A stretch of 64,000 nt of DNA, from positions 15,935,784-15,999,783 of the forward strand of contig NC_052154.1 of the NCBI RefSeq assembly GCF_902713615.1, given 5' to 3'. This stretch comes from Scyliorhinus canicula. Lineage: Eukaryota. The notes under the pieces were generated by a model that saw only the letters and a program-made list of their open reading frames with translations, did not search any database and was not told the DNA's origin. Both the position numbers and the translations under genes were made by a program. Positions 1,907 to 50,704 of the stretch are shown in pieces. The number at the start of each line of letters is the position of its first letter. The stretch's first letter is position 1.

Positions 1907-1968
1907 CCCCCTGCAAAAAAATCAAGTCCGGCGGGGGTGGTGGTCTACAAAGTAAGTCTGTCCGGTGG

Positions 1969-4536: not shown

Positions 4537-4546
4537 TTTTGAGTAG

Positions 4547-5839: not shown

Positions 5840-5872
5840 GATCGATCCTGACTGTTCTTAATTAGATTAAAT

Positions 5873-6332: not shown

Positions 6333-6419
6333 TTCCTCCATATGGTCATGAATATTAACAGTTGGTGAAAAATGTCCAGGTTTAAGAAATCACATTTCAT
6401 CCTTAGGGTGTTGTCCAGT

Positions 6420-8258: not shown

Positions 8259-9365
8259 TACCTCAATCAAGTCCCCCCTCAGCCTTCTCTGCTCCAGGGA
8301 AAACAACCCGAGCCTCTCTTCATAGCTGAAACACTCCAGCACAGGCAACATTCTGGTGAATCTCCTCTGCACCCCCTTGAGTGTAATCACTTCCTTCCAA
8401 AGTCTATGTAGACTACATCAACTACACTACCCTCATCTACACACTTAGTCACCTCATCGTAAAATTAAATCAAATCTGTAACACATGATTTCCCTTTGAC
8501 AAAGCTATGCTGACTATCGTTGATTAATCCTTGCCTCCCGAAGTGGAGATTAATTCTCCCCTACTTCATTTCCTAAAACTAGGTTCAGCACTCTCCCCAG
8601 GGATGTTCCGTTTACGTGCAACCCGTCCAACTTGTGCAGATCCCACCATCCCGAGAAACGAACCCAGTGGTCCAGGAATCTAAAGCCTTCCCTCTTATAC
8701 TATCTCCTCAGCAATGCATAGATCTGCTCCAGCCTCTTATTCCTATACTCACTGGTATGTGGCACTGGGAGTAATCCAGAGATTACAATTTTGAGGTCCT
8801 GCTTTTCAATCTGCTACCCTGCTCCCTAAATTTTGTTGCAGGTCCTTACCCCTCTTTCACCGATGTTGTTGGTACCAATGTGAACAACAACCTCTATCTG
8901 TTCTCCTTCCCCCTTCGGAATGCCATGCAGTCGTTCAGTGACATCCCTGACCCTGGCACCAGGGAGGCAACACACCATCCTGGAGTCATGCCTAAGGTCC
9001 CAGAAACGTCTGGCTTCACCCTTCACTGCCATTCTTAATCGTATTGCTCTTCCACTCTTGCTCCCCCCCCCCCCCCCCCCCCCCCCGGTGCAGCTCCACT
9101 CCCCTGGGGATCTGTCGCTCCCTCCGTTTTCCAACACGGAGTCACGGTTCTCGGGCGAGAGGCACTCTGCCAGAGCTTTTTCAACTCCGCCTGCTGCCTC
9201 CCTCCTTCTGAATGGTGGTCCACCCCTTCCCTCTCCGACTGCACTTCCCTAAACTGCGGGGTGACCACACATTTCAGCCCCCGCTACACACGCAACTCTC
9301 AGCCTCGCGGATGCCCCTCAGTGCGTCCGACCCACGCTCAAGCTCCGAAACCTGGAGCTCAAGGT
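8259..9365 (-). mobile_element. Internally deleted CR1 LINE (ORF1 esterase plus ORF2 remnants)
   Basis: MVCCLPGARVRDV and VVHIGTNN (SGNH esterase); QRRFTRMLP...RRLRGDLIEV at the left end. Confidence 0.8.
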
Positions 9366-9478: not shown

Positions 9479-9823
9479 CATAGAATTTGCAGTGCACAAG
9501 GAGGCCATTCGGCCCATCGAGTCTGCACCGGCTCCTGGAAAGAGCACCCTACCCAAGGTTAACACCTCCACCCTATCCCCATAACCCAGTAACCCCACCC
9601 AACACTAAGGGCAATTTTGGACACTAAGGGCAATTTATCATAGCCAATCCACCTAATCTGCACATCTTTGAACTGTGGGAGGAAACCGGAGCACCCGGAG
9701 GAAACCCACGCACACACGGGGAGGATGTGCAGACTCCGCACAGACAGTGACCCAAGCCGGAATCGAACCTGGGACCCTGGAGCTGTGAAGCGATTGTGCT
9801 ATCCACAATGCTACCATGCTGCC
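9479..9823 (-). mobile_element. HE1/V-SINE-like SINE, CR1-type tail
   Basis: Same head, core and tail as 752-1102. Confidence 0.9.
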
Positions 9824-10199
9824 CACTTCAAGTGACTGCGGAGAGTTGTGGGGGTGAGACCCGCGCAGACACGGGGAGGATATACCCGGAGCTCAAGCTG
9901 GTCGATCTGGAATAAATCAAAACTGCAAGTAGATTCAGGCACAGAGTGAAGATGCAGAAAGCTCGGGAGACGATGCCCCCGGGGGTAACAGTGAACCTTA
10001 ACTTGCCTGCTCAGCTCAAGCACAGATTTGCTTCCACACCTTTGTTTGCACCCAGTCATGACCGATCACTATCTGGTAAACAGCAGTGCCTGAGGCAGGA
10101 CAGGGAAGGTCATTGGGGTTTTGTCCCCGATTCGGGGCCTGGGCTGAGAGAACAATAGGATCCCGGGAGCCCTGGAAACAAGAGGAACGGTTACCAGGG

Positions 10200-11087: not shown

Positions 11088-12572
11088 CAGCGAAAAGAAA
11101 ACACTTCCAACCTTCTCCTTTTATTGTGTACCCGCCAAAGGGTTGGACACACCTCCCTCAACATGGACCAGGAACTGCCCTACTTCCCCCACTCATTGCT
11201 TTCCAGAGGCAGTCATTTTCTTTTTTTAAAAACAAAAACATTTTGATTAGGATTTTTTTGCAGGATCGACTTTTTAAAAAATGAGATCTATTTTTTTAAC
11301 CTACGCACCAGTTCCCCCCCACACCCCTTTTTGTTTTGGCGACACAGGGGGCTTGCTTGTTGGATGTTAACCAGGCGAGTACTAACTACTTCAGATTTGG
11401 GAAGTGCCTGCTCGGAAGAAATGTTAAAAATGTTCTTTAAAAATCACCAGCCAGTGAACAGTCACTAATTATTTTCCAGGTGTCCACACTCCTGTGCATT
11501 AATGAGCAGGTTAGACAGCATGTCGTCTGATTTTTTTTTACTGTAAACCATTGAAATGGTCATTTTTTAATAAATTGTCAACTTTTTTTAGATATAAGAT
11601 TAAAACTCCAGTGGTTAATTTTGTATAATCCACGTTTCTAGTGTGTGTGTGTGTTAATATAAATGAAAATGATTCATGTCTGGTTGAATAATGAGACGGC
11701 AATTGTTGGATATGTGCAGTAAAGGTATCTAATGTCCTGGTGTTCCTACTGTTTTCAGTATTAATAATTTTATTTTTCAGAAGTGGGGAAAAGTACAATT
11801 TGAGCAAATGTGAATTCAGTTTGAAAACTTGTTGCGTTATGGATATGGTAGTAGGGGATATAATTACTGCATAACATGATGTTTGGTGGCGTCGAAACCT
11901 ACCCATAAATGGGCAGAGAATTTTATAGGTTCAATGGAGTGAGATTTCTCTCGGTGACTGGCTCTAATTATCTCTTTCCTTGGTATTTATCATAAGAAAA
12001 AATAAAGTTTGCTTGATTTTTTTTTCTTAATTCTTGGCATATATGAAAAGGCTCTTTTTCATTTCTGCTCTCATCTGTGGATGGATGTGCATACTTTTAA
12101 TTACACTTGCAAGCAGCCAGATTTTGCCAATTACCTTCCTGGGCCGTGGAGAAATAAGCATGCTAACTTTGTTACGTTTCTGTTCCATGAGTGCTGCAAG
12201 TTAAAAGTGCCTAAGTGGTCACTTCTGAGTAAACCTGGATGCTGAGATTTGTCACGCACTTTGAGTTCATCACAGTGGTCCTTGCAGTTGTGTGTACACA
12301 CAATGCACTTTCTGACCTGATAGGATGGTGAGAGTGGCAATAGTAACTATTCTCTCTCTCTTTCCCCCCCCCCCCCCCCCCCCCCCCCCCCCAGATAAGT
12401 ACAAATATTCGCACCCGCACTGGGATGGGGTGAATGACCACAGATCAGACTCGGACTTCAGATTGTAACCTCAGTGGCTCACGACAACACCCAAGCAAGG
12501 CATAGACTTTTCAGTTTGACGTTGAAATCTACAAGTTCACTGGCCCTTGGGTGTTTTAATAGGTTTGCATAT

Positions 12573-12740
12573 AGGGGCTGCTTTAGCACAGGGCTAAATA
12601 GCTGGCTTTTAAAGCAGGCCAGCGGCACAGTTCAATTCCCGTACCAGCTTCCCCGAACAGTTGCTGGAATGTGGCGATTAGGGGCTTTTCACAGTAACTT
12701 TATTTGAAGCCTGCTTGTGACAATAAGTGATTTTCATTTG
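12573..12740 (+). mobile_element. Short tRNA-head SINE with L2-like tail
   Basis: ggggctgctttagcacag...gttcaattcc...ttcacagtaact...ttgtgacaataag; sister copies at 53930 and 54936. Confidence 0.75.
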
Positions 12741-16496: not shown

Positions 16497-17095
16497 GGGG
16501 CGAGATTCTCCCCCCCCCCCCCCCCCCCGGCCGGGTCGGAGAATCACAGGGGGCCGGCGTCAATCCTGCCCCCGCCGTGTCCCAAAGTCTCCAGCACCAG
16601 AGATTCGGCGGGGGCGGGAATTATGCCGCGCCTGTCGGTGCGCCCGCCCCCCCCCCCCCCCCCCCCCCGGCGATTCTCTGGCCCGCAATGGGCCGAAGTC
16701 CCGCCGCTGTCATGCCGGTCCCGCCAGCGTGGATCAAACCACCTACCTTACCGGTGGGACCAGGCAGCATGGGCGGGCGCGGGGCGATCTGGGCCCTGGG
16801 GGGTGTCCCCACGGTGGCCTTGCCCACGATCGGGGCCCACCAATCGGTGGGCGTGCCTGTGCCGTGGGGGCACTTTTTTCCTTCAGCTTTCGCCATAGCC
16901 TTCACGATGGCAGAGGCGGAAGTGTCCCCTCCCTTGCGCATACCCGGAGATGATGTCAGCAGCCGCTGACACTCCGCCGCATGCGCGGACTCCGGCCAGC
17001 GAAGTCCCTTCGGCCCCGGCTGGCGTGGCGCCAAAGGCTGTTCTGGCTGGCGGGGCGCCAACCACTCCGGCGCAGGCCTAGCCCCTCAATGTTGG
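16497..17095. repeat. GC-rich palindromic MITE-like repeat
   Basis: ggggcgagattctcc...ggagaatc internal inverted motifs; same style as 39513 and 63518. Confidence 0.55.
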
Positions 17096-27040: not shown

Positions 27041-27770
27041 ATCAAATCGAAATGGTTTGTGAGATAAAATCTGCTGAAATTTTTAATATTCTTTTAGCAA
27101 TATCACTTCAGATAACCGGGGGTTAGGAGGGTGGGGTGGAGTTAAACTTCCTTTTACAGCAATAAAAAATTAGATGTTTTGTTCATTTGATTATTTAAAT
27201 TTGCTTTAAATGTTGCAATGCTGATTATCACTCATGCCGCTCTGTACAATTCCATATTGAATATGTGTTCCACAGAAGCACATGATGTCTTCATTCAGTA
27301 ATAAACACTTAAGCTCAAGCTATTGTGCACTAATTAGAAATATGTTTCACTCTGTAAATTTAATGTCACAGAAGCAGCAACCTGAAACAAATTGGCAAAG
27401 GGCAGAAATTTTACCAGTAAATGGCAGAGTGCCAGGTTCAGACAGAAAACCTATGTGGGCCAGGTTTCAGCCATCCACACTTTGCCTTTTTTTTTGAAGG
27501 GGACGTGCGTTATGCCATAATTGTGAGGGGTGGTGCCTAAACACGCCAGCAAGCCTGACTTTACAGAGATCGGGGCAAAGTGTAATTAAAGACCCCCCTC
27601 AAGGATAGCAGGACTCCCTCTCCACCGCCATTGATAGCATATTGCCACCGCCGGAACCCCCCCCCCCCCCCCCCCCCCCAACCATCACCCAGTATAGACC
27701 GCCAGAATTGGGGCCCTCCCAATGGATCACCCTATATGCGCCGCCTTTTCAGACCCTGCCCCCTTATGGC

Positions 27771-28825
27771 TGAAGGGGGGGATTCAGCGATGATATCTCT
27801 TAAAACCGAATCGTTAGCATGAGTAGTTTTACATAAATTGGTTTATTAAGGATTGAGATGAATTATAGGACTGAGTCATCATTATTAACCATTAAACATG
27901 TACTGTTTCTTACAAACAGTCAGCAAGCTGCTGGGACTGTCAGCAGCTGTCAGGATGATGATCAATCATGCGCTGCTTCCGACTCTATTGGGTGAAGTTT
28001 AAACACTGCTTGCAATTCTATTGGATAAGTTTAAAAGAAGCAGCTTCAGGGAATGGATCGTGTTCAACTGGGGTGGGCTGTGCATTTTTCAACGTTGTAT
28101 AATTACTGTGCTCGGCTCTTTGTTCGGTAGAACAGGTCTTGGCTGATATCCAGTCCGTTCTCCGTGTACACGTAACAAGCTTGATTAAGTAGCCATCTTG
28201 TCCAGGTTGTGGTGTTTTTGTTTCTCTCTGTACTGAGCTGAGCCACAGGGAATAACCGCACATGGAAGAACTCGCTCCTACATTATTTGGCGCACTGCGA
28301 GCACAGGTGTACACAGGATTCTGGCAGAATAATCCGCTTCCTAAATTCGGGTGAGTGTATTTCAATTTGCCACCCAGTAGATAGAGGAGTTACGGATCAG
28401 GCGGTCAGATCCATAAGTTGTGCGAAAGTTGCGAGTAGGTAGCGGTGGGCACACACAACACTGAGAATGTGCTAATGTTGGGTGGGCAAAGACGGACTTT
28501 TGTGCCATGCCGATGAACAGAGCAGGATAAACCATCGCGCGTCAAAAAGATTGTAAAGGGTACGGCCTCACGACAACTCGATGGAGGCCAAAACAGAAAA
28601 CCCCAGAGGGGCTCAGAGTAAGTGACCAGTCAGACAAAGCTGGTGTCGTTATTCTGAGGTTGTATGTTTAACAGGGTTTGAAACCCCACCGCTTAGAGCA
28701 GCTGCGGATAAAAGGGTAAGTACAGAGAAATGACAAAGATACATGAATTGGAGCACAAAAGTTAACTGTTTTAGCATGCTAACGATTCAGTTTTAAGAGA
28801 TATCATCGCTGAATCCCCCCCTTCA
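27771..28825 (+). mobile_element. 1055-bp element with 51-bp inverted termini and an ERV-like LTR/PBS/leader interior
   Basis: Inverted repeats 27771-27821 and 28775-28825 (50/51 match), TG..CA ends, 5-bp TSD ATGGC; putative LTR TGAAGG...CCTACA (27771-28282), PBS-like TGGCGCACTGCGAGCACAGG (28288), donor G|GTGAGT (28351). Confidence 0.85.
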
Positions 28826-29554
28826 ATGGCCATGCCCATTATTCAGGTCTCCCCTGGAAGTACCAAGCTGGCAGGGTCAGGGGCCAGGGCACTGTTCCGT
28901 TATGTCTCTGACCACCCATGCCTACAATGGCCTTCAAGCCCCCTGGCATGGTCATCACGTCCGTCTCCGTTTGTGGAAGCCAGTAATGATCCCTGGCTTC
29001 ATGATTTGTGTGTCCTCCGGCACCACGTCACGGGGCGGCTAGGAACACAGCACGTTCCTAGAAGCAAAAACAGAAAATGCTGGATAATCTCAGCAAGTCT
29101 GACAGCATCTGTGGAGAGAGAATGGAGATAACGTTTCGAGTCTGGATGACTTTCTCAAAGCTAGAGAACTGGAGATAGGATGATATTCATACTGGATTCT
29201 CTAAATTTATAAAAAAAAGAATGAAAAAAAATATTCAGTGATTCCGCTTTCACCACCTTCTGAGACAAGTTACAAAGTCTTCTGAGAGAAAAAATTCTCC
29301 TAATTTCTTTCCTATAAGGGCGACTCCTAATTTTAAAACAGTGGTCACGAGTTCAGGACTCAGCCCAAGAGGAAACATCCCTTTCAATGTCCACCTTGTC
29401 AAGACTATTTAGGAAGTTATATGCTTCAATCAAGTTGCCCCTTACTCTCTGGATGCAAGTCATTTGAACATATTTATTTGTGGTGATCAGAATACTAGAT
29501 GAATGAACTGTAAGATATGTCCCTTCTCAGATATCACATCAGTGTTGAGCCAAA

Positions 29555-30146: not shown

Positions 30147-30505
30147 CACGGTAGCACAGTGGTTAACACTGTTGCTTCACAGCACCAGGGTCCCGGGCTC
30201 GATTCCCGCTTGGGTCACTGTCTGTGCGGAGTCTGCACGTTCTCCCCGTGTCTGCGTGAGTTTCCTCCGGGTGCTCTGGTTTCCTCCCACAGTTCAAAGA
30301 CGTGCAGGTTCGGTGGATTGGACATGCTAAATTGCACTTAGTGTCCAAAAAGGTTCTGAGGGGTTATTGGGTTACGGAGATAGGGTGGAAGTGAGGGCTT
30401 AAGTGGGTCGGTGCAGACTCGATGGGCCAAATGGCCTCCTTCTGCACTGTATGTTCTATGTTCTATGTAAGCCTACTTGTGACAATAATAAAGATTATTA
30501 TTATT
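30147..30505 (+). mobile_element. HE1-like SINE with CR1-type tail followed by an L2-like tail
   Basis: ...ctgcactgtatgttctatgttcta then tgtaagcctacttgtgacaataataaagattattatta. Confidence 0.85.
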
Positions 30506-31989: not shown

Positions 31990-34900
31990 TAGAACTGTAC
32001 AGCACAGTACAGGCCCTTCGGCCCACGATGTTGTGCCGAACTAGTCTGAAACTAAGATCAAATCAACCTACTCCCAATCATTCTAGTGCACTCCATATGC
32101 CTATCCAATAACCGCTTGAAAGTTCCTAAAGTGTCCGACTCCACTACCATAGCTGGGTGTGCGTTCCACGCCCCAACCACTCTCTGAGTAAAGAACCTAC
32201 CTCTGACATCCCTCCTACATCTTCCACCATGAACCTTATTTATGCCCCCTTGTAACAGCTACATCCACCCGAGGAAAATGTCGCTGAACGTCCACTCTAT
32301 CTATCCCTCTCATCATCTTCTATACCTCAATTAAGTCACCTCTCATCCTCCTTCCCTCCAATGAAAAAAGCCCTAGCTCTCTCAACCTTTCCTCAGAAGA
32401 CCTACCTTCCAATCCAGGCAGCATCCTGGTAAATCTCCTTTGCACCCTTTCCAATGCTTACACATCCTTCCTGTAATGAGGTGACCCGAACTGCACACAA
32501 TACTCCAAATGTGGTCTAACCAAGGTCTTGTACAGTTGCAGCATAACCTCAAGGCTCTTGAACTCAATCCCCCTGTTAATAAATGCTAACACACTATAGG
32601 CTTTCTTCACGGCTCTATCCATTTGGGTGGCAACTTTCAGAGATCTATGGATATGAACTCAGAGATCTCTCTGCTCCTCCACATTCCTCAGAACCCTGCC
32701 GTTAACCCTGTAATCCGCATTCAAATTTGGCCTACCAAAATGAATCAACTCTCACTTATCAGGGTTAAACTCCATCTGCCACGTTTCAGCCCAGCTCTGC
32801 ATCCTATCAATGTCTCTTTGCAGCCTACAACAGCCCTCCACATTATCCACTACTCCACCAATCTTGGTGTCATCAGCAAATTTACTAACCCAACCTTCAA
32901 CTTCATCATCCAAGTCATTAATAAAAATCATAAACAGCAGAGGATCCAGCACTGATCCCTGTGGTACACTGCTGGTGACTGGGCTCCAGGTTGAAAATTT
33001 ACCATCTACCACCACCCTCTGTCTTCTATGTGATAGCCAGTTACTGATCCAATCAGCCAAATTTCCCTCTATGCCATACCTCCTTACTTTCTGCATGAGC
33101 CAACCATGGGGCACCTTATCAAACGCCTTATTAAAATCCATGTGTACGACATCAACTGCTCTACCTTCATCTCTGTACTTAGTTACCTCCTCAAAGAATA
33201 CAATCAAACTTGTGAGACAAGACTTACCCCTCACAAATCCGTGCTGACTATCCTGGATTAAGCTGTATCTTTCCAAATGATCATAAATCCTAATCCTCAG
33301 GACCCTTTCCAATAATTTGACACTAACCGGCCTATAAATCCCAGGGTTATACTTTTCCCTTTCTTGAACAAGGGGACAACATTCGCCTCTCCCCAGTCTT
33401 CTGGCACTATTCCTGTGGACAGTGAGGACATAAAGATCAAAGCCAAAGGCTCTGCAATCTCATCCCTTGCCTCCCAAAGAATCCTAGGATATATTACATC
33501 AGGCCCACGGGACTTATCTACCCTCAGGCTTCTCAAAATTTCTAACACATCTTCCTTCCGAATATCTATCTCCTCCAGCCTACCAGCCTGTATTGCACTA
33601 TCCTCCTCAACAATATGGCCCCTCTCCTTTGTGAACACTGAAAAAAAGTATTCATTTAGGGCCTCTCCTATATCTTCAGACTCCATGCACACGTTCCCAC
33701 TATTGTCCTTGACCGGCTCAAACTTCACCTCGGTCATTGTACATATTGGTACTAACGACATAGAGAGGAAGGGGCATGAGGTCCTGCAGCAGGAGTTCAG
33801 GGAGCTAGGCAGAAAGTTAAAAGACAGGACCTCTAGGGTTGTAATCTCGGGATTACTCACTGTGCCACGTGCCAGTGAGGATAGAAATAGGAAGATAGAA
33901 CAGCTAAACACATGGCTAAACAGCTGGTGTAGGAGGGAGGGTTTCTGTTATCGTGACCACTGGGAGCTCTTCCGGAGCAGAGCAGACAGAGAGATGTTGC
34001 TGAACACAGTGGGTCTGGTGGCCTGAAGTGCATATGTTTTAATGCAACAAGTATTACGGGTAAGGCAGATGAATTTAGAGCTTGGATTAGTACTTGGAAC
34101 TATGATGTTGTTGCCATTACAGAGACCTGGTTGAGGGAAGGACAGGATTGGCAGCTAAACATTCCAGGATTCAGATGTTTCAGGTGGGATAGAGGGGGAT
34201 GTAAAAGGGGTGGCGGAGTTGCGCTACTGATTAGGGAGAATATCACCGCTGTACTACGGGAGGACACCTCAGAGGGCAGTGAGGCTATATGGGTAGAGAT
34301 CAGGAATAAGAAGGGTGCAGTCACAATGTTGGAGGTTTACTACAGGCCTCCCAACAGCCAGCGGGAGATAGAGAAGCAGATAGGTAGACAGATTTTGGAA
34401 AAGAGTAAAAACAACAGGGTTGTTGTGATGGGAGACTTCAACTTCCCCAATATTGACTGGGACTCACTTTGTGCTAGGGGCTTAGACGGGGCAGAGTTTG
34501 TAAGGAGCATCCAGGAGGGCTTCTTAAAACAATATGTAGACAATCCAACTCGGGAAGGAGCTGTACTGGACCTGGTATTGGGGAATGAGCCCGGCCAGGT
34601 GGTAGAAGTTTCAGTAGGGGAGCATTTCGGGAACAGTGACCACAATTCAGTAAGTTTTAAAGTGCTGGTGGACAAAGATAAGAGTGGTCCTAGGGTGAAT
34701 GTGCTAAATTGGGGGAAGGCTAATTATAACAATATTAGGCGGGAACTGAAGAACCTAGATTGGGGGCGGATGTTTGAGGGTAAATCAACATTTGACATGT
34801 GGGAGGCTTTCAAGTGTCAGTTGAAAGGAATTCAGGACCCGCATGTTCCTGTGAGGAAGAAGGGTAAATACGGCAAAATTAGATAACCAGAGATATTGTC

Positions 34901-37900
34901 GGGCTCGTCAAAAAGAAAAAGGAGGCATTTGTCAGGGCTAGAAGGCTGGGAACAGACGAAGCCTGTGTGGAATATAAGGAAAGTAGGAAGGAACTTAAGC
35001 AAGGAGTCAGGAGGGCTAGAAGGGGGTCACAAAAAGTCATTGGAAAATAGGGTTAAGGAAAATCCCAAGGCTTTTTACACGTACATAAAAAGCAAGAGGG
35101 TAGCCAGGGAAAGGGTTGGCCCACTGAAGGATGGGCAAGGGAATCTATGTTTGGAGCCAGAGGAAATGGGCGAGGTACTAAATGAATACTTTGCATCAGT
35201 ATTCACCAAAGAGAAGGAATTGGTGGATGTTGAGTCTGGAGAAGGGTGTGAAGATAGCCTGGGTCACATTGAGATCCAAAAGGACGAGGTGTTGGGCATC
35301 TTGAAAAATATTAAGGTAGATAAGTCCCCAGGGCCTGATGGGATCTACCCCAGAATACTGAAGGAGGCTAGAGAGGAAATTGGTGAGGCCTTGACAAAAA
35401 TCTTTGGATGCTCACAGTCTTCAGGTGATGTCCCGGAGGACTGGAGAATAGCCAATGTTGTTCCTTTGTTTAAGAAGGGTAGCAAGGATAATCCAGGGAA
35501 CTACAGGCCGGTGAGCCTTATGTCAGTGGTAGGGAAATTACTGGAGAGAATTCTTCGAGACAGGATCTACTCCCATTTGGAAGCAAATGGACATATTAGT
35601 GAGAGGCAGCATAGTTTTGTGAAGGGGAGGTCGTGTCTCACTAACTTGATAGAGTTTTTCGAAGAGGTCACAAAGATGATTGATGCAGGTAGGGCAGTGG
35701 ATGTTGTCTATATGGACTTCAATAAGGCCTTTGACAAGGTCCCTCATGGTAGACTGGTACAAAAGGTGAAGTCACACGGATCAGGGGTGAGCTGGCAAGG
35801 TGGATACAGAACTGGCTAGGTCATAGAAGGCAGAGAGTAGCAATGGAAGGGTGCTTTTCTAATTGGAGGGCTGTGACTAGTTGTGTTCCGCAGGGATCAG
35901 TGCTGGAACCTTTGCTGTTCGTAGTATATATAAATAATTTGGAGGAAAATGTAACTGGTCTGATTAGTAAGTTTGCAGACGACACAAAGGTAGGTAGAAT
36001 TGCGGATAGCGATGAGGACTGTCAGAGGATACAGCAGGATTTAGATAGTTTGGAGTGGAGAGATGGCAGATGGAGTTTAATCCAGACATATGTGAGGTAA
36101 TGCATTGTGGAAGGTCTAATGCAGGTAGGGAATATACAGTGAATGGTAGAACCCTAAAGAGTATTGAAAGTCAGAGAGATCTAGGTGTACAGGTCCACAG
36201 GTCACTGAAAGGGGCAGTACAGGTGGAGAAGGTAGTAAAGAAGGCTTATGGCATGCTTGCCTTCATTGGCAGGGGCATTGAGTATAAGAATTGGCAAGTC
36301 ATGTTGCAGCTATATAAAACCTCAGTTAGGCCACACATGTTCAATTCTGGTCGCCACACTACCAGAAGGATGTGAAGGCTTTAGAGAGGGTGTAGAAGAG
36401 ATTTACCAGGATGTTGCCTGGTATGGAGGGCATTAGCTTTGAGGAGCGGTTGAATAAACTCGGTTTGTTCTCACTGGAACGACGGAGGTTGAGGGGCGAC
36501 CTGATAGAAGTCTACAAAATTATGAGGGGCATAGACAGAGTGGATAGTCAGAGGCTTTTTCCCAGGGTAGAGGGGTCAATTACTAGGGGGCATAGGTTTA
36601 AGGTGCGAGGGGCAAGGTTTAGAGTAGATGGACGAGGCAAGTTTTTTACACAGAGGGTAATGGATGCCTGGAATTCGCTGCTGGAGGAGGTGGTGGAAGC
36701 AGGACGATAGTGATATTTAAGGGGCAATCTTGACAAATACATGAATAGGATGGGAATAGAGGGATACGGACCCAGGAAGTGTAGAAGATTGTAGTTTAGT
36801 CGAGCAGCATGGTCGGCACGGGCTTGGAGGGCTGAAGGGCCTGTTCCTGTGCTGTACTTTTCTTTGTTCTTTTATTGCTCACATAAGTGTAAAAACCTTG
36901 GGGTTTTCCTTGATCCTACCCGCCAAGGACTTCTCATGCCCCCTCCTAGCTCTCCTAAGCCCTTTCTTGAGCTCCTTCCTAGCTATCTTGTAACCCTCAA
37001 GTGCCCTAACTGAACCTTGTTTTCTCATCCTTACATACGCCCCCTTCTTCCTCTTGACAAGACATTCAACCTCTTTTGTAAACCATAGTTCCCTCACTCA
37101 CCATTTCCTTACTGACTGACAGGGACATACATATCAAGGACACGCAGTATTTGCTCCTTGAACAGGCTCCACATCTCAATTGTGCCTATCCCTGACAATT
37201 CCTGTTTCTATCTTATGCTCCCGAATTCTTGCCTAATCACATCGTAATTACCCTTCCCCCAGTTATAAACCTTGCCCTGCCGTATGTTCCTATCCCTATC
37301 CATTGCTATAGTGAAGGTCACCGAATTGTGGTCACTATCTCCAAAGTGCTCTCCCAGAACCAAATCTAAAACTTGGCCCGGTTCATTACCCAGTACCAAA
37401 TCCAATGTGGCCCCACCTCTTATCGGTCTATCCACATATTGTGTGAGGAAACCCTCCTGCATACACTGGATATAAACAGCCCCATCCAAACTATTCGAAT
37501 TATAGTGGTTCCAATCAATATTTGGAAAGTTAAAGTCACCCATGACAACTACCCTGTGGCTACCGCACCTATCCAAAATCTGCATTGCTATCTTTTCCTC
37601 CACATCTGTTACTCTGGGGGGCTATAGAAAACTCCTAACAAAGTGACCACTCCTTTCTTATTTCTAACTTCAGCCCACACTACCTCAGTGGATAGATCCT
37701 CCTCAAACTGCCTTTCTGCAGCCATTATACTGTCCTTGATTAACAATGCTACTCCTCCACCTCTTTTACCACCTTCCCTAATCTTACTGAAACATCTAAA
37801 CCCCGGAACCTCCAACAACCATTCCTGCACCTGTTCTATCCACGTCTCCGTAATGGCCACAACATCGTAGTCCCAGGTACCATTCCATGCTTCAAGCTCA

Positions 37901-38895: not shown

Positions 38896-39217
38896 TGGGC
38901 AGCACGGTAGCACAAGTGGCTAGCACTGTTGCTTCACAGCGCCAGGGTCCCAGGTTCGATTCCTCGCTTGGTCACTGTTTGTGCAGAGTCTGCACTTTCT
39001 CCCCGTGTCTGTGTGGGTTTCCTCCAGGTGTTCCGGTTTCCTCCCAGAGTCCAAAGACATGCAGGTTAGGTAGATTGGCCATGATAAATTGTCCTTGGTG
39101 ACCAAAAAGGTTAGGAGGGGTTTCTGGGTTACGCGGATAGGGTGGAAGTGAGGGCTTAAGTGGGTCGGTGCAGACTCGATGGACTGAATGGCCTCTTTCT
39201 GCACTGTATGTTCTATG
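38896..39217 (+). mobile_element. HE1/V-SINE-like SINE
   Basis: gggcagcacggtagcacaagtgg...ggttcgattcc; tail ctgcactgtatgttctatg. Confidence 0.9.
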
Positions 39218-39789: not shown

Positions 39790-42700
39790 GTGGACGGTGC
39801 GGGAGAGGAAGTGAGCGGCCGGCGTATTGTTTAACCTTTAAAAACTTACCTTGCAGGAGAAGCGGCCTTCAGATTTTCGGCGGGAGCAGTGGCCAGGGGC
39901 CTGTCGGGAAGGTAAGTTTACCTCTTTAAAAACTTACCTTTCGAGCTGTAGGAAGTCGGCCGTGGGATTTCTGGCAAGATTTGTTAGTACCTGTATATAA
40001 GTCGGGCGGTTGCTAAACCCGAGACACTACACTTGTAGTGTCCCCCACCCTTCCACCTCCTCTAACCTAAGGGGTTGAGTGAATATCAGGTAAGCTCTTC
40101 CTTACTTTTTCTTGTTTTATCTAGAGGGGATGGCAGGGAAGGCAGTGCAATGTTCCTCCTGCAGAATGTTTGAGGTGAGGGACACCGTCAGTGTCCCTGC
40201 TGATTTCACCTGTGGGAAGTGCACCCATCTCCAGCTCCTCAGAGACCGTGTTAGGGAACTGGAGCTGGAGCTGGATGAACTTTGTATTATTTGGGAGGCA
40301 GAGGTGGTCATAGATAGAAGCTTCAGGCATGTAGTTACTCCGAAGAATAAAAATAGATGGGTGACGGTGAGAGGGGCTGTGAGGAAGCAGTCAGTACAGG
40401 GATCCCCTGTGGTTGTTCCCCTTAGTATCAAGTATACCGCTTTGGATACTGTTGGGGGAGATGACTTACCAGGGGTAAGCCATGGGGTACAGGTCTCTGG
40501 CACAGAGTCTGTCCCTGTTGCACAGAAGGGAAGGGGGAGAGGAGTAGAGCATTAGTCATTGGAGATTCCATAGTTAGGGGGATAGATAGGAGATTCTGGG
40601 GAACGCGAAAGACTCGCGGTTGGTTTGTTGTCTCCCAGGTGCCAGGGTCCTCGATGTCTTGGATCGTGTTTTCGGGATCCTTAAGGGGGAGGGGGAGCAG
40701 CCCCAAGTCGTGGTCCACATAGGCACCAACGACATAGGTAGGAAAAGGGATAGGGATGTAAGGCAGGAATTCGGGGAGCTGGGGTGGAAACTTAGATCTG
40801 GAACAAACAGAGTTATTATCTCTGGGTTGTTACCCGTGCCACGTGCTAGCGAGATGAGGAATAGGGAGCGAGAGCAGTTGAACACATGGCTGCAGGGATG
40901 GTGCAGGAGGGAGGGATTAAGATTCCTGGACAATTGGGGCTCATTCTGGGGTAGGTGGGACCTCTACAAGCAGGATGGGCTACACCTGGATCAGAGGGGT
41001 ACTAATACCCTGGGGGGAAATTTGCTCATGTTCTTCGGGAGGGTTTAAACTAGTTCAGCAGGGGGTTGGGAAACTGAATTGTAGCTCCATTATCCAGGAG
41101 GTTGAGAGTAGTGATGTCATGAGTAAGGTTTCAAAGTTGCAGGAGTGAACCGGCAGGCAGGAAGGTGGTTTAAAGTGTGTCTACTTCAATGCCAGGAGCA
41201 TCCGGAATAAGGTGGGTGAACTTGCAGCATGGGTTGGTACCTGGGACTTCAATGTTGTGGCCATTTCGGAGACATGGCTAGAGCAGGGACAGGAATGGTT
41301 GTTGCAGGTGCCGGGGTTTAGATATTTCAGTAAGCTCAGGGAAGGTGGTAAAAGAGGGGGAGGGGTGGCATTGTTAGTCAAGGACAGTATTACGGTGGCA
41401 GAAAGGACGTTTGATTAGGACTTGTCTACTAAGGTAATATGGGCTGAGGTTAGAAACAGGAAAGGAGAGGTCACCCTGTTAGGAGTTTTCTATAGGCCTC
41501 CGAAAAGTTCCAGAGATGTAGGTGCTAGATTTGGAGGTAGGTGAGCACTTTGGTGATAGTGACCACAATTTGATTACGTTTACTTTAGCGATGGAAAGGG
41601 ATAGGTATATACCGCAGGGCAAGAGTTATAGCTGGGGGAAAGGCAATTATGATGCGGTGAGGCAAGACTTAGGATGCATCGGATGGGGAGGGAAACTGCA
41701 GGGGATGGGCACAATTGAAATGTGGAGCTTGTTCAAGGGACAGCTACTGCGTGTCCTTGATAAGTATGTACCTGTCAGGCAGGGAGAAAGTGGTCGAGCG
41801 AGGGAACCGTTGAATCACTTGTCAAGAGGAAGAAGGAGGCTTATGTAAAGATGAGATGTGAAGGTTCAGTTAGGGCGCTCGAGAGTTACAAGATAGCAAG
41901 GAAGGACCTAAAGAGAGAGCTAAGAAGAGCCAGGAGGGGACATGAGAAGTCTTTGGCAGGTCGGTTCAAGGGTAACCCTAAAGCTTTCTATAGATATGTC
42001 AGGAATAAAAGAATGACTAGGGTAAGAGTAGGGCCAGTCAAGGACAGTAGTGGGAAGTTGTGTGTGGAGTCCGAGGAGATAGGAGAGGTGCTAAATGAAT
42101 ATTTTTTGTCAGTATTTACACAGGAAAAAGACAATGTTGTCGAGGAGAATACTGAGATACAGACTACTAGACTAGAAGGGCTTGAGGTTCATAAGGAGGA
42201 GGTGTTAGCAATTCTGGAAAGTGTGAAAATAGATAAGTTCCCTGGGCCGGATGGGATTTATCCTAGGATTCCCTGGGAAGCTAGGGAGGAGATTGCTGAG
42301 CCTTTGGCTTTGATCTTTATGTCATCATTGTCTACAGGAATAGTGCCAGAAGACTGGAGGATAGCAAATGTTGTCCCCTTGTTCAAGAAGGGGAGTAGAG
42401 ACAACCCTGGTAACTATAGACCAGTGATCCTTACTTCTGATGTGGGCAAAGTCTTGGAAAGGTTTATAAGAGATAGTATGTATAATCATCTGGAAAGGAA
42501 TAATTTGATTAGGGATAGTCAACACGGTTTTGTGAAGGGTAGGTCGTGCCTCACAAACCTTATTGAGTTCTTTGAGAAGGTGATCAAACAGGTGGACGAG
42601 GGTAAAGCAGTTGTGGTGTATATGGTTTTCAGTAAAGCATTTGATAAGGTTCCCCACGGTAGGCTATTGCAGGAAATACGGAGGCATGGGATTCAGGGTG

Positions 42701-43107
42701 ATTTAGCAGTTTGGATCAGAAATTGGCTAGCTGGAAGAAGACAAAGGGTGGTGGTTGATGGGAAATGTTCAGCCTGGAGTCCAGTTACTAGTGGTGTACC
42801 GCAAGGATCTGTTTTGGGGCCACTGCTGTTTGTCATTTTTATAAATGACCTAGAAGAGGGCGTAGATGGATGGGTGAGTAAATTTGCAGATGACACTAAA
42901 GTCGGTGGAGTTGTGGACAGTGCGGAAGGATGTTACAAGTTACAGAGGGACATAGATAAGCTGCAGAGCTGGGCTGAGAGGTGGCAAATGGAGTTTAATG
43001 CAGAAAAGTGTGAGGTGATTCATTTTGGAAGGAATAACAGGAAGACAGAGTATTGGGCTAATGGTAAGATTCTTGGTAGTGTGGATGAGCAGAGAGATCT
43101 CGGTGTA
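39790..43107 (+). mobile_element. CR1 LINE retaining 5' UTR and ORF1 (zinc finger, leucine zipper, SGNH esterase), 3'-truncated ORF2
   Basis: ATG 40130 MAGKAVQCSSC...CGKC, LELELDEL zipper, esterase; ORF2 APE with an internal deletion at 41521; RT up to QRDLGV. Confidence 0.93.
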
Positions 43108-43451
43108 CCGCCCCATGTATCTTTTCAGAACACAATCTTTCTCAAGACCTGAAAATTGTGGAATTCCTTACCTGCCCAACTCTTTATGCACCTACAGGTC
43201 ACATGTTACTGAAACAGAAGCTTGACTTCATTGACCATTAACACCTCATTTAGATCGTCTTCTGTTTTCCTCTCCCTCCCATGCACCTTGAACCCCCAGC
43301 CAAACACCTCCAGAACCAAGTTTTTGCTGTACTGCATCCCATGTCAAAGATCGTCCCCCTCCCCCAAAAAAAGCACAAAGAATTAATTGATTCACTCATC
43401 GTGAACAGATTAAGGAGGCAAAAAAAGGGAATGTCAAGGATATATAGATAT

Positions 43452-43790
43452 ACATAGAATTTACAGTGCAGAAGGAGGCCATTCGGCCCATCGAGTCTGC
43501 ACCGGCTCTTGGAAACAGCACCCTACCCAAGGTCAACACCTCCACCCTATCCCCATAACCCAACCCAACACTAAAGGCAATTTTGGACACTAAGGGCAAT
43601 TTATCATGGCCAATCCACCTAACCTGCACATCTTTGGACTGTGGGAGGAAACCGGAGCACCCGGAGGAAACCCACGCACACACGGGGAGGATGTGCAGAC
43701 TCCGCACAGACAGTGACCCAAGCCGGAATCGAACCGGGGACCCTGGAGCTGTGAAGCGATTGTGCTATCCACAATGCTACCGTGTTGCCG
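43452..43790 (-). mobile_element. HE1/V-SINE-like SINE
   Basis: Nearly identical to 752-1102. Confidence 0.9.
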
Positions 43791-45099
43791 TGATGGGGCA
43801 GAGAATGCTACGAATGTTTCGTTTGTCCACCTGCAAAAACAAAATAGGGAAAATTGTCCAATAAAAGCAAAATATTGCAGATACCGGAAATGTAAACAGA
43901 AAATGCTGAGAAAGTCAGCAGGCCAGACAGCATCTGTGAAGAGAGGGAAACGGGAGTCTCCAGTCATTGTGACCACCTTCCACAGAAGGGCAAGGGCCCT
44001 CTGCCAGACACAAACACAGCCCAGTGTTTCCATAACGCTGTTCAATGTGCAACCAGGAAATGGAAACGTGTTCAGTTTGAGAAAAAGAGGAGAATGGGTC
44101 AGCATTTCCCCCTCTCTCTGAAATTGGTCAATTGCAACTCCACCATCCTCCAACCCCCACCAGGTTTCACGTTTGGGGGGGGGGGGGGGGGTTGAATTGG
44201 CAGGTCTTTTATCCCGCTCTGCATATTTGGAACCGCCTCTCCCTCTGGCGGGCTGAAGTTTGAATGCACGGCCGCTCCCGCACGTACACACCCTAAACTT
44301 GTCCCTGACTCATTGGCTGCACTCTGAACGCGGAGAATGCGGACGAAGCACTGGGTTGAATGAGGTGAGCGAGACGATTGAGACATGTGTGTGTCTCTGT
44401 TGTTTCCGCAAAGGTTTGCTCGCCCTCCCCCTGGCTGACAAGGCTGGATGTGAACGTGCCAGGCTGCACGATTCCCCCAGTGGGCGGTGCAATGCCCTCT
44501 TGGGCTGGCTTCACCCACACTCAAGAGGCACCAGCGCAGAAATTCGGAAGTTCGACCCCGTCCACAACTAGGGGGGGGGGGGGGGGGGTTGGACAAACCC
44601 ATGTTTGGTTAATATGGCCCATTAGGAGCGTCAATTGAACAAAAACAGTCACTGATGCAATTGTGATATAATATCAGATACATCGATGCAACGATGCTTC
44701 AAATCCCAGCTCCCCACGCCGGGGGGGAATCATTTCCCTTCTGTCCAAACCATGGCCAGACTTCAACTTTAAACTGTGCAGGGCGATTGTACATCCACAT
44801 TGTTCAGGGCCCCCTGTAGGGTGCAAACTCCGGCACAGACTCACTGACTGATTAACATTTCACACATTCCCCCTGGATTTCAGAGGCAGTTTATTTTTTA
44901 TATCTGAAATGAATCCTGATGTCAGAAGGTGTTTTTTGGGCTAGATTAGCGGGAGCCCCCATCAATCCCGGGAGCGTTAGAATGAGCCTCTATTATTCTG
45001 GCGTTGCAATGTTGAATTGTGAGCGATTGTATTAACCGGGATTACAGTGTGATCGCCCGGAGCAGCCTTTACTCTTAGGCAGCGGCTGTCTCTCTCTCT

Positions 45100-45960
45100 G
45101 TCTCTCCCCTTCTCCCTCCTGTCTGTCTACCCCTCTCCCTCCTGTCTGTCTACCCCTCTCCCTCCTGTCTGTCTACCCCTCTCCCTCCTGTCTGTCTACC
45201 CCTCTCCCTCCTGTTTGTCTCTCCCCCTCTCCCTCCTGTCTGTCTACCCCTCTTCCCCCTGTCTGTCTACCCCTCGCCATCCTGTCTGTCTACCCCTCTC
45301 CCTCCTGTCTGTCTACCCCTCTCCCCCCTGTCTGTCTACCCCTCTCCATCCTGTCTGTCTACCCCTCTCCCTCCTGTCTGTCTACCCCTCTCCCTCCTCT
45401 CTGTCTACCCCTCTCCCTCCTGTCTGTCTACCCCTCTCCATCCTCCCTGTCTACCCCTCTCCCTCCTGTCTGTCTACCCCTCTCCCTCCTGTCTGCCTAC
45501 CCCTCTCCCTCCTGTCTGTCTACCCCTCTCCCTCCTGTCTGTCTACCCCTCTCCCTCCTGTCTGTCTACCCCTCTCCCTCCTGTCTGTCTACCCCTCTCC
45601 CTCCTGTCTGTCTCTCCCCCTCTCCCTCCTGTCTGTCTACCCCTCTCCATCCTGTCTGTCTACCCCTCTCCCTCCTGTCTGTCTACCCCTCTCCCCCCTG
45701 TCTGTCTCTCCCCCTCTCCCTCCTGTCTGTCTACCCCTCTTCCCCCTGTCTGTCTACCCCTCTCCATCCTGTCTGTCCATCCCACTCTCCCCGTCTACCC
45801 CACTCCCCCTCTCTGTCTACCCATCTCCCTCCTGTCTGTCTACTCCTCTCCCTCCTCTCTGTCTACCCCTCTCCCTCCTCTCTGTCTACCCCTCTCCCTC
45901 CTGTCTGTCTATCCCACTCCCCCTCTGTCTCCGCCACTCCCGCCTCTCTGTCTATCCCAT
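45100..45960. repeat. 23-bp pyrimidine-rich minisatellite (CCCCTCTCCCTCCTGTCTGTCTA)n, degenerating to about 46270
   Basis: Directly visible tandem array of more than 30 units with point variants. Confidence 0.95.
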
Positions 45961-46651
45961 TACCCCTCTCTGTCTAACCCACTACCCCCTCTGTCTACCC
46001 CACTCTCCCCTTTGTCTCCCCCTCCCCCTCCCTGGTTCCCCTCCGTCGCCCCTATTCGCTCTCAGTTCCTCCACTCCCCACCTCTTCTCTGTCTCCCCCA
46101 CCCCCACTCCCCACCCCTCTGTGTCTCCTCCACTCCCCACCCCTTCTCTGTCTCCCCCAAACCCCCTCTGTCTCCCCCACCGCCACCCCTTTGTGTCTCC
46201 CCCACTCCCCACCCCTCTCTGTCTCCCCCACTCCCCCTCTGATCCCTCTCTCTGCCCCCCAATGCCTCCCATACATCCCCCATCTTCCAAACGCAGCCAG
46301 GATTCATGCTCCCATTCCCAGGACAGGCGCTCAGTCGGCTGTGAGGCGATGTGGGTGGGTTACTCTGGTCACTTGCTGCCATTCCTATTGCTGGAGTGTT
46401 GCTGTCAATTCAGAAAGGGGAGGGGGAGTGGCCCACAGGTTATGTTTGAAAAACCCCTGGGGCACTTCATTACTGTAAAAAAATAATAAGCCCGCCCCTC
46501 GCTCCGTCAGGGGCTGTGACTGGCCTCACTCTGCTCCTGTGCAATCCGCTTCTTGTTCAGCAGAGATGTCCCGCTGGAAAGTGTGCTGCCCGCTGCCGTC
46601 AAGGTGTTGAATGCAGTTGCTGCCGCCCGGGGGAAAGGTGCCTGTGCGGCC

Positions 46652-46750
46652 ATGGAGAAGGCAGCGGTGCAGCGGGGGCTGTGCATGGAGAAGGCAGCGG
46701 TGCAGCAGGGGCTGTGCATGGAGAAGGCAGCGGTGCAGCAGGGGCTGTGC
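46652..46750 (+). repeat. Three tandem 33-bp units, each beginning with ATG
   Basis: atggagaaggcagcggtgcagc(g/a)ggggctgtgc x3 = MEKAAVQ(R/Q)GLC. Confidence 0.95.
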
Positions 46751-47590
46751 ATGCCCCGCAACTTCAGCTGCATGGCCGGTTTGTACGGCAGCCTGGCCGA
46801 GGACTGCGCCGTGGCGGCCGGGACCGGGGACCCGGAGCCGGCGGCGGGCTGCAGGCAGCGCAGCCGGGAGCCCAGCACCAACAGCGGCGGCAGCAAAACC
46901 CCCAGCCCGGGCCAGCGGAGGAGGGCCAAGTCGCTGCCAGCCCCCGGGGGCCGAGCGGTCACCCTGCTGACCCGGGCCAGCAGCAAGAAGGTCCGCTTTG
47001 CCGACTCGCTGGGCTTGGAGCTGACCACCATCCGGCACTTCTGCGACGGCGACATGCCGCACGTCCCCCCGCGGGTGATGGCCAGGCTGCGGGAGAGGCC
47101 GCCCCAGTGCCTGCTCAGTGACCAGATGATGGCCATGTTCCTGGACAGCCCCACTCACCTCCTGGAGCCGCTGTTCACCAACCCGGGCCGCTGGCCAGAC
47201 TTCCAGGAGCAAGTCAGGCTGGCCAGGGTGTGCCTGGAGAGCATCTCCACCGACCAGTTCAGCATCCTGGGGGTGATCAGGGTGTGGAACCTGGCCTACG
47301 AGAAGCAGGTGACGGTGAGGTACACCCTCAACCAGTGGAGCTCCTTCGTGGACATCGCTGCCTGCCACAGCGCCCACTCTGCGGACAACCAGACTGACAC
47401 TTTCTCCTTCAAGCTGGTGGCCCCCGTCTTCCTGGACACGGGGGGCACCCTCCAGTTCGCCATCAGGTACCTGGCGGCGGGGCAGGAGTACTGGGACAAT
47501 AACAAGGGCTCCGACTACCAGGTAAGAAGCCACAAGTTCAAAATCTCACCGCCCAAAGACTGGGAAAACGGTTGGATCCACTTCATTTGA
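46652..47590 (+). CDS. PPP1R3E: Protein phosphatase 1 glycogen-targeting regulatory subunit (PPP1R3E most likely, PPP1R3D alternative), 312 aa
   Basis: Kozak gccATGG; PRNFSC N-terminal motif; RVxF motif KKVRFADSLGLEL; CBM21 motifs VWNLAYEKQVTVRY and EYWDNNKG; C-terminal GWIHFI characteristic of R3E/R3D. Confidence 0.85.
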   Translation: MEKAAVQRGLCMEKAAVQQGLCMEKAAVQQGLCMPRNFSCMAGLYGSLAEDCAVAAGTGDPEPAAGCRQRSREPSTNSGGSKTPSPGQRRRAKSLPAPGGRAVTLLTRASSKKVRFADSLGLELTTIRHFCDGDMPHVPPRVMARLRERPPQCLLSDQMMAMFLDSPTHLLEPLFTNPGRWPDFQEQVRLARVCLESISTDQFSILGVIRVWNLAYEKQVTVRYTLNQWSSFVDIAACHSAHSADNQTDTFSFKLVAPVFLDTGGTLQFAIRYLAAGQEYWDNNKGSDYQVRSHKFKISPPKDWENGWIHFI

Positions 47591-49472: not shown

Positions 49473-49805
49473 TAGAATCTGTACAGTGCAGAAGGAGGCC
49501 ATTCGACCCATCAGGTCTGCACAGACGCAGTGAAAGATCACTTTAAATAGTTCCTACTCTATCTCCTAATCCCCATAACCTAACCTGCACACTGTTGGAA
49601 ACTAAGGGGCAATTTAGCATGACGAATCCATCTAACCCGGATACCTTTGGACTGTGGGAGGAAACTGGAGCATCCGGAAGAAACCCACACAAACACGGGG
49701 AGAAGGTGCAAACTGCACACAGACAGTCACCCAAGGCCGGAATCGAACCCAGGTTCCTGACACTGTGAGTCAGCGTTGCTAACCACTGTGCCACCATGCC
49801 GCCCG
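49473..49805 (-). mobile_element. HE1/V-SINE-like SINE
   Basis: Head, core and CR1-type tail on the minus strand. Confidence 0.88.
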
Positions 49806-50704
49806 AATTTTGCTAAATCTCAATTTGCCTTCAGTGTTGTTCTTCACTGGCTCTTTAGGACAAGGAAAAGATGCTGAATGTAGACCTGATGATGTGTTGT
49901 CCATTTCCCCTTCTCCACAGAGCAAAGGTTCCACTCGTCCCTTGCTACTTCACACTGCCGCACTGCTTATCTTCATGAGCAACGTGTAGGTCACAAGGAC
50001 TTTGAAGGGGCAAAGTCAGCCTCACAACTGCAGTCCTTATGCATGAAACAACAATCTTGTTTGACATGATGGTGCAACCATGACCCTGACTGGCTAAATA
50101 TTTTCTAAACTCCATCATACACAAACATCTGATTGAAATGATGGAAAAAGATGTGAACAAAGCTGAGTACGTTCCAGTACAAAACAGGAATTAATAATAA
50201 AAGGTGTGGGACATTATCCAAGAGATTTTTTTAAACACAACGAAACCAGGAAATTTTGCAATAAATACACAGATTGTAGGTCACTAACCTGAAATGAGAA
50301 GATGGTCATTGTTTTCAGTTCTGATGAAATCCAGTCTAAAATGTTGACCTGTAATTCGCTTTCAGCTGTTGACTGGCTCCTGTGAATTTCTAGACCTTTG
50401 CATTTTTTTTGCATGTAACGTAACTTGTAATTGAAATAGACGTTGACTTGCTTTACCTGTTACGTAAAATAGACCCATAAGTGACAAAACATTTTTGAAT
50501 ATGAAGATTTATGCTATCTACAGATTGAAATTTTCTTCTCAATGAAAGTGGAATTGCTCACTCCACGACAGTTTCTTTTGCCAATTGAACAATTCTTCAC
50601 TGGTATCACTCAAATGGAACTAGAGGCGAGGGGCTTCGATTATTTGAGGAAACTAGAGAAACCAGATTGTTCTTAAAACACTTAAAGCAGCGGGGGAAAT
50701 TTGA

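What the first reader, a model, noticed from the sequence alone, without database searches (positions are those of the whole stretch)
27766..28830. Retroviral LTR-PBS-leader closed by an inverted copy of its own U3 end, integrated with a perfect TSD
Seen: 27771-27821 and 28775-28825 are 51-bp inverted repeats (one mismatch) with TG..CA ends, flanked by direct ATGGC. The interior is organised like a proviral 5' end: ATTGG boxes, TATAAT near 28098, LTR-like end CCTACA (28277-28282, imperfect inverse of TGAAGG), PBS-like TGGCGCACTGCGAGCACAGG (28288) and donor G|GTGAGT (28351). It has no gag/pol and no direct second LTR. The right junction is the palindrome TTAGCATGCTAA (28771-28782), reusing TTAGCATG from the left repeat. 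Established: DDE integrases need only two CA-ended att termini and make 4-6 bp TSDs, and normal proviruses have direct LTRs. Inference: either a template-switch cDNA with two U3 ends that was integrated, or a non-autonomous ERV-derived element with TIR architecture, a hybrid between an ERV and a MITE. This is the best novel-system candidate in the window.
Basis: partly seen in the sequence, partly recalled or inferred. Interest (0 to 1): 0.8.

Follow-up and report, generated by a model that had tools for sequence, protein, structure and literature searches.

The report
Catshark mobile element with inverted ends
A 1,055-base non-coding mobile-element insertion in a catshark genome has 51-base inverted ends and a 5-base target duplication; it is a real insertion, but more likely a lone LTR or small transposon than a new virus-transposon hybrid.

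Summary
27771-27821 and 28775-28825 are 51-nt inverted repeats (50/51) with TG..CA tips, flanked by ATGGC on both sides. Chance expects none. Of 44 exact inverted pairs of at least 20 nt in the window, only this one has a target duplication of 4 bp or more. The single mismatch is a C/T change at a CpG, so the arms were probably identical at insertion. The interior has no coding capacity and no second copy in the window.

The host is a catshark: its PPP1R3E is 94% identical to that of Scyliorhinus torazame.

TG..CA tips plus a 5-bp duplication point to a retroviral-type DDE integrase. The LTR-PBS-leader reading is not established. Its LTR-end/TGG pattern occurs at chance frequency, the + strand has no poly(A) hexamer, and the minus strand gives an equally good LTR parse.

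No further catshark DNA could be reached, so the copy census that would decide the matter was not done.

Ranking:
- Solo LTR with unusually long terminal inverted repeats: about 0.4.
- Non-autonomous TIR transposon of an integrase type: about 0.3.
- One-off aberrant retroviral cDNA: about 0.1.

Interest is modest.

The parts
27766..27770 (.). Left copy of the 5-bp target-site duplication (ATGGC)
   Evidence: Identical to 28826-28830. A chance match has probability 1/1024.
27771..27821 (+). Left 51-nt terminal inverted repeat, starting TGA
27822..28774 (.). Non-coding interior (953 nt), 12-21 stops in every frame
   Evidence: CpG observed/expected for the element is 0.69, against 0.46 for the window.
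27973..28035 (+). 33-nt tandem repeat, 1.9 copies, carrying the two ATTGG motifs (CCAAT on the minus strand)
28098..28103 (+). TATA-like hexamer on the + strand, with no poly(A) hexamer downstream of it on this strand
27842..27867 (-). Minus-strand TATAAT (27867-27862) followed 14 nt later by AATAAA (27847-27842); a CA lies 21 nt further on, at the inner edge of the left arm
   Evidence: Motif level only, in an A+T-rich stretch.
28277..28307 (+).
   Evidence: The pattern is at chance frequency and is not validated.
28350..28356 (+). Splice-donor-like GGTGAGT; a second one, GGTAAGT, is at 28715-28721
   Evidence: The window background is 0.125 per kb per strand.
28771..28782 (.). 12-nt palindrome at the inner edge of the right arm
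   Evidence: It is one of 15 such palindromes in the window. Given the arm's palindromic CATG, it needs 4 extra bases to match (1/256).
28775..28825 (-). Right 51-nt terminal inverted repeat, ending TCA
28826..28830 (.). Right copy of the 5-bp target-site duplication (ATGGC)

Best explanation
Shown: a 1,055-bp non-coding DNA with TG..CA tips and (originally perfect) 51-bp inverted ends was inserted into unique catshark DNA, duplicating 5 bp of the target. Inferred from established knowledge: a retroviral-type DDE integrase joined the two CA-3' ends to target phosphates staggered by 5 bp, and gap repair produced the ATGGC duplication. Inferred, and my preferred identity: the unit is a solo LTR of an uncharacterised catshark LTR retroelement or ERV. 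It would be what remains after LTR-LTR recombination removed the internal part, and its LTR has unusually long terminal inverted repeats. The tandem repeat, the CCAAT/TATA-like motifs and the relative CpG richness would then be LTR regulatory sequence. The PBS-like and donor-like motifs would be incidental.
For: The TIR and TSD are real and unique in the window. Its TGA..TCA ends and 5-bp TSD meet the rule curators use to annotate a solo LTR (PMC8969392) and lie within the 3-6 bp TSD range of LTR elements and retroviruses (PMC10045372). A length of 1,055 bp is ordinary for an LTR. There is no coding capacity. A 33-nt tandem repeat lies upstream of TATA-like motifs. On the minus strand, TATA, AATAAA and CA have textbook spacing, which would make U5 roughly the 51-nt arm. 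[quoted passage not shown]
Against: To my own knowledge, a 51-nt terminal inverted repeat that was probably perfect at insertion is far longer than the short repeats usual at LTR ends, and it looks like a transposon TIR. The third base is A, not the usual T of TGTNR (PMC2836005). There is no poly(A) hexamer on the + strand, and the minus-strand signals lie in A+T-rich sequence where they arise easily. No paired copy flanking gag-pol could be examined, because no other catshark DNA was reachable.
Confidence: 0.4

Rival explanations
1. It is a non-autonomous TIR DNA transposon (a long, MITE-like element) moved by an integrase-type transposase encoded elsewhere. The transposase would be Ginger2/TDD-like or of an undescribed superfamily. 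The interior would be passenger or leftover sequence.
For: The TIRs are 51 nt, sharply bounded and probably perfect at insertion. The TSD is perfect. The size is about 1 kb and there is no coding capacity. The TIR length lies within the 50-180 bp Ginger2 range, and a 5-bp TSD matches TDD-4/5 (PMC2836005).
Against: The Ginger terminal motif TGTNR is not met (the end reads TGAAG). Metazoan Ginger2 makes 4-bp TSDs in A+T-rich RTATAY targets, whereas here the target is ATGGC (PMC2836005). Ginger2 was not found in vertebrates (PMC3575427). There are no subterminal repeats beyond the arms. There is no second copy in 64 kb. DNA transposons are the minority class in catshark (PMC11979771).
Confidence: 0.3
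2. This is the reader's first option: a one-off aberrant retroviral cDNA. It would consist of an LTR (27771-28282), a PBS and a leader, closed by an inverted copy of the first 51 nt of U3. The inverted copy would have arisen by a strand switch at the palindromic CATG during DNA synthesis, and integrase would then have inserted the molecule through two U3-type ends.
For: It predicts arms identical at insertion and a sharp inner boundary at a palindrome. The left half looks LTR-like, with a tandem repeat and a TATA. Two consensus donor-like heptamers lie on the same strand, where about 0.13 are expected. The + strand of 28283-28774 folds somewhat better than shuffles (z -2.3), compared with z -1.6 for the minus strand.
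Against: The LTR-end plus TGG pattern is at chance level: 0.59 per kb per strand, and three on the + strand of the element. No AATAAA or ATTAAA lies between the TATA and 28282. To my own knowledge, the 16th base of the PBS-like stretch does not fit the nearly invariant C61 of tRNA T-stems. The minus strand gives an equally good parse. No open frame runs into the junction. Such integrants should be very rare. No parent provirus was available for comparison.
Confidence: 0.1
3. It is a chance inverted repeat or an assembly artefact.
For: None, beyond the fact that read-level support could not be checked.
Against: Shuffles expect 0 matches. The 5-bp flanking repeat sits exactly at the arm tips, uniquely among 44 inverted pairs. 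The window has no N runs.
Confidence: 0.02

Closest known systems
Solo LTR of a Ty3/Gypsy-type retrotransposon or endogenous retrovirus
   Same: TG..CA (here TGA..TCA) tips, a 5-bp TSD, about 1 kb, non-coding, and promoter-like repeats (PMC8969392; PMC10045372).
   Different: The terminal inverted repeat is 51 nt rather than a few to about 20 nt (own knowledge). U3-R-U5 signals are ambiguous between the strands. Pairing around gag-pol was not demonstrated.
Ginger2/TDD cut-and-paste transposons (integrase-like transposase)
   Same: TIRs of 50-180 bp, a 4-5 bp TSD and LTR-like termini (PMC2836005).
   Different: TGTNR is not met. The target is not A+T-rich. No transposase is present. The superfamily has not been reported from vertebrates (PMC3575427).
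Vertebrate Maverick/Polinton elements
   Same: They are integrase-inserted and have TIRs of 46 bp upward (PMC8097293).
   Different: They have 6-bp TSDs, AG-type end motifs and are 12-25 kb with eight genes. None of this is seen here.
Defective retroviral DNA forms made by intramolecular events (own knowledge; no paper read here)
   Same: They could give two identical integrase-competent ends and an inverted terminal segment.
   Different: No integrated example with two U3 ends was found or compared. For this locus it remains a model only.

Membership tests
LTR retroelement, solo LTR | 5'-TG..CA-3' tips (variants TGA..TCA accepted) | tested here: met
   rule from PMC8969392.
LTR retroelement, solo LTR | 4-6 bp target-site duplication | tested here: met
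   ATGGC on both sides.
LTR retroelement, solo LTR | The same unit occurs elsewhere as two direct copies flanking gag-pol | not testable with these tools
   No catshark DNA beyond the window was reachable. There is none in the window.
LTR retroelement, solo LTR | Promoter and poly(A) signal ordered as U3-R-U5 | tested here: inconclusive
   The + strand has a TATA but no hexamer. The minus strand has both, in A+T-rich sequence.
   No host tRNA set was available. The only ARAGORN call in the window is a doubtful tRNA-Phe(aaa). The motif pattern is at chance level.
Ginger1 | 4-bp CCGG/CCGT TSD and TGTNR termini | tested here: not met
   5-bp ATGGC and TGAAG (PMC2836005).
Ginger2/TDD | TIRs of 50-180 bp and a 4-5 bp TSD | tested here: met
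   51 nt and 5 bp (PMC2836005).
Ginger2/TDD | TGTNR termini and an integrase-like transposase in autonomous copies | tested here: not met
   The end reads TGAAG, and there is no ORF. An autonomous partner could not be looked for.
Maverick/Polinton | 6-bp TSD and (AGT)2 or (AG)3 end motifs | tested here: not met
   PMC8097293.
IS3EU/GingerRoot | TA..TA tips and a 6-bp TSD | tested here: not met
   PMC10045372.
MITE-like non-autonomous family | Many copies with the same ends and different TSDs | not testable with these tools
   There is a single copy in 64 kb. Collection scans were empty.

The most novel reading that the evidence does not exclude
The element belongs to a family of TIR-bounded elements in a vertebrate that are moved by a retroviral-type integrase or transposase. 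It would be either a Ginger-like superfamily not so far recorded in vertebrates or an LTR-derived element that has acquired inverted ends, a step once proposed for the origin of Ginger TIRs (PMC2836005).
Probability: 0.2. Interest if true: 0.65.

Novelty: new member of a known kind. Interest (0 to 1): 0.3.

Why it matters
If it is a solo LTR or an ordinary non-autonomous transposon, it is one more uncatalogued repeat in a genome that is two-thirds repeats. Its value would be for annotation only. If a census shows a multi-copy family with these inverted LTR-type ends, it would be a vertebrate example of the bridge between LTR retroelements and integrase-type DNA transposons. That bridge has so far been discussed mainly from invertebrate and protist Ginger elements. 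A unique junction derived from a normal provirus family would be a rare natural record of an aberrant integration product.

Tried and rejected
**Searches for other copies (all negative or blocked)**
- BLASTN and nhmmer of the element against the window found only itself.
- TIR strings were absent from viral, metagenome and prokaryote genome collections and from the paper library.
- The 115-aa ORF has no relatives among 5.8 billion proteins.
- Ten exact ORFs from the element and its flanks are not in the protein collection.
- The orthologous S. torazame locus could not be fetched: 'no DNA: file too large'. The element also lies about 18 kb from PPP1R3E, beyond the 10-kb flank.

**Other checks without result**
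- Rfam found nothing at gathering threshold and only one E=3.6 hit locally.
- Pfam on ten interior ORFs found nothing meaningful.
- The immediate flanks are not repeated in the window, so there is no paralogous empty site.

**Rejected on TSD length and tip sequence**
- hAT, Tc1/mariner, PIF/Harbinger, piggyBac, Maverick, IS3EU and Ginger1.
- Shifting the element boundaries does not rescue any of them. The inverted repeat cannot be extended outward, because C at 27770 does not pair with A at 28826.

**Rejected by reasoning**
- A post-integration inversion of a normal provirus would not place an inverted U3 tip exactly against the TSD.

- In my private reasoning I twice recalled short sequence strings from memory. 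One was several tRNA primer-binding-site strings. The other was a short polypurine/U3 junction of a murine retrovirus.
- The generic motif patterns (poly(A) hexamers, donor heptamers, TATA) were typed from textbook knowledge.
- In one search I joined the two host flanks, not element sequence, as an 'empty-site' query. The file remains in /scratch.

Full report
**What is there**

The window reads as the finding says. 27771-27821 and 28775-28825 are a 51-nt inverted repeat, 50 of 51 positions complementary. It starts TGAAGG and ends CCTTCA, and ATGGC lies immediately outside both arms.

A 29-nt terminal probe allowing 3 mismatches finds only these two sites, and 100 shuffles give none. I listed every exact inverted pair of at least 20 nt lying 100-8000 nt apart. 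There are 44, mostly SINE copies in opposite orientation, and only this pair has a flanking direct repeat of 4 bp or more at the arm tips.

The inverted repeat cannot be extended outward, because C at 27770 does not pair with A at 28826. It stops abruptly inward as well: in-register identity drops to 1-6 of 10 per block, and the best local alignment beyond the arms (score 17) is no better than shuffles (mean 18.3).

The one mismatch (27807) is C versus T at a CpG. The arms were therefore very probably identical when the element arrived. CpG observed/expected is 0.69 in the element against 0.46 for the window, which fits a fairly young insertion.

**Coding capacity and copies**

Each of the six frames of the interior has 12-21 stops, and no frame is open into the right junction. 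The longest ORF (115 aa, minus strand) has no relative in the 5.8-billion-protein collection. Ten interior ORFs give no meaningful Pfam hit.

BLASTN at word size 9 and nhmmer find no other copy in the 64 kb, direct, inverted or diverged. Rfam finds nothing.

**Host and surroundings**

An ORF at 46553-47590 is PPP1R3E (CBM21 domain). It is 94% identical to the protein of Scyliorhinus torazame and 73-77% identical to those of other sharks. The window therefore comes from a catshark close to that species.

The window also holds a Ty3/Gypsy-type element, LINE fragments and many SINE-like repeats of about 300 bp. The immediate flanks of the insertion are unique in the window.

**What the ends say**

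TG..CA tips together with a 5-bp duplication are the mark of retroviral-type DDE integrases. [quoted passage not shown]

That an enzyme of this kind made the insertion is an inference from established knowledge. It is common to all serious explanations.

- A hexamer within one mismatch of CCTTCA (CA kept) followed within 6 nt by TGG occurs 0.59 times per kb per strand across the window. It occurs three times on the + strand of the element itself.
- No AATAAA or ATTAAA lies between the + strand TATA (28098) and the proposed LTR end.
- The PBS-like stretch cannot be matched to tRNAs, because no host tRNA set is available. The one ARAGORN call in the window is a doubtful tRNA-Phe(aaa).
- From general tRNA knowledge, the 16th base of the PBS-like stretch would pair with U rather than the nearly invariant C61.

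Some points favour the parse.

- Two consensus donor-like heptamers lie on the + strand (28350, 28715), where about 0.13 per kb are expected.
- The + strand of 28283-28774 folds somewhat better than shuffles, z -2.3, against -1.6 for the minus strand.

The minus strand yields an equally tidy LTR parse. TATAAT is at 27867-27862, AATAAA follows 14 nt later at 27847-27842, and a CA lies 21 nt after that, at the inner edge of the left arm. The two ATTGG motifs then read as CCAAT upstream. Two contradictory parses of equal quality mean that neither should be believed without copies to compare.

**The palindrome**

TTAGCATGCTAA at 28771-28782 is real. It is one of 15 twelve-nt palindromes in the window. 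The arm ends in the self-complementary CATG, so only four further bases need to match (1 in 256). It is compatible with a strand switch at microhomology but does not demonstrate one.

**Known families**

- Ginger1 is excluded by its 4-bp CCGG/CCGT TSD and TGTNR tips.
- Ginger2/TDD matches in TIR length (50-180 bp) and, for TDD-4/5, in the 5-bp TSD. It does not match in tips (TGAAG here) or in target preference (PMC2836005), and it was not found in vertebrates (PMC3575427).
- Vertebrate Mavericks have 6-bp TSDs and AG-type end motifs (PMC8097293).
- IS3EU/GingerRoot has TA..TA tips and 6-bp TSDs (PMC10045372).
- Curators annotate unknown units with 4-6 bp TSDs and TGT..ACA or TGA..TCA ends as solo LTRs (PMC8969392). 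This element meets that rule.

**Ranking**

1. I put a solo LTR with unusually long terminal inverted repeats first, at about 0.4. It needs only a quantitative oddity in a class abundant in this host.
2. A non-autonomous TIR transposon of an integrase type comes second, at about 0.3. It explains the perfect, sharply bounded 51-nt arms best, but it needs a superfamily not recorded in vertebrates.
3. It explains the identical arms and the palindromic boundary, but it rests on chance-level motifs and a very rare event.
4. An artefact or chance repeat is about 0.02. The remainder is unassigned.

A post-integration inversion of a normal provirus is rejected. It would not place an inverted U3 tip exactly against the duplication.

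**What could not be done**

The decisive test is a census of copies in the host genome and the orthologous empty site. The shark assemblies in the collection return no DNA because the files are too large. The element is also about 18 kb from the nearest usable gene. Exact ORFs of the element and its flanks are not in the protein collection. Scans of viral, metagenome and prokaryote collections and of the paper library were empty.

In my reasoning I twice recalled short strings from memory. These were tRNA primer-binding sites and a polypurine/U3 junction of a murine retrovirus.

In one search I joined the two host flanks, not element sequence, for an empty-site query, and that file is still in /scratch.

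**Verdict**

The structure is real and cleanly inserted, and it is correctly attributed to an integrase-type enzyme. Its reading as a retroviral LTR-PBS-leader hybrid is unproven, and simpler identities are more likely. Interest is 0.3. The novel reading, an integrase-type TIR family in a vertebrate, has probability about 0.2.

Noticed in passing
window 108-6767, minus strand: There is a Ty3/Gypsy-type LTR retroelement. Its protease (4547-5281), RT/RNase H (3367-4536) and integrase (1969-3261) lie in three separate ORFs, so pol is interrupted at least twice. Repeated blocks at 108-386/6490-6767, 608-751/5873-6016 and 1752-1908/6009-6165 are in an order that does not fit a simple two-LTR layout, and a SINE-like insert lies in the left part. 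It has no similarity to the element under study.
   Followed up: partly
window 32641-35819 and 41851-43152: There are LINE fragments: endonuclease plus RT at 34131-35819 (+) and RT at 41851-43152 (+). Inverted, 75-79% similar copies lie at 32641-33738.
   Followed up: partly
window, e.g. 758-1107, 9479-9828, 30147-30460, 38903-39217, 43452-43794, 49482-49808, 57093-57385: A dozen or more copies of SINE-like repeats of about 300 bp with tRNA-like heads are present in both orientations. The ARAGORN 'tRNA-Phe(aaa)' at 12575-12653 was not checked.
   Followed up: no
window 45027-46270: A C/T-rich minisatellite with a 23-nt period lies just upstream of PPP1R3E. It produces a spurious 423-aa ORF of proline/serine/leucine repeats.
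   Followed up: no
window 46553-47590 (+): This is a single-exon PPP1R3E gene (CBM21 domain), 94% identical to the S. torazame protein. It identifies the host as a catshark.
   Followed up: yes
window 9063-9086, 12364-12393, 16510-16528, 16643-16668, 27657-27679, 48566-48590, 62106-62130, 62713-62740: Homopolymer C (or G) runs of about 20-30 nt recur at eight or more sites. One lies 91 bp upstream of the insertion. Their origin is unexplained; they may be tails of a repeat family.
   Followed up: no
window 27766-27770 plus 28831-28833: With the element removed, the target would read ATGGCCAT, an 8-nt palindrome. The 5-bp duplication lies off-centre within it (read).
   Followed up: no
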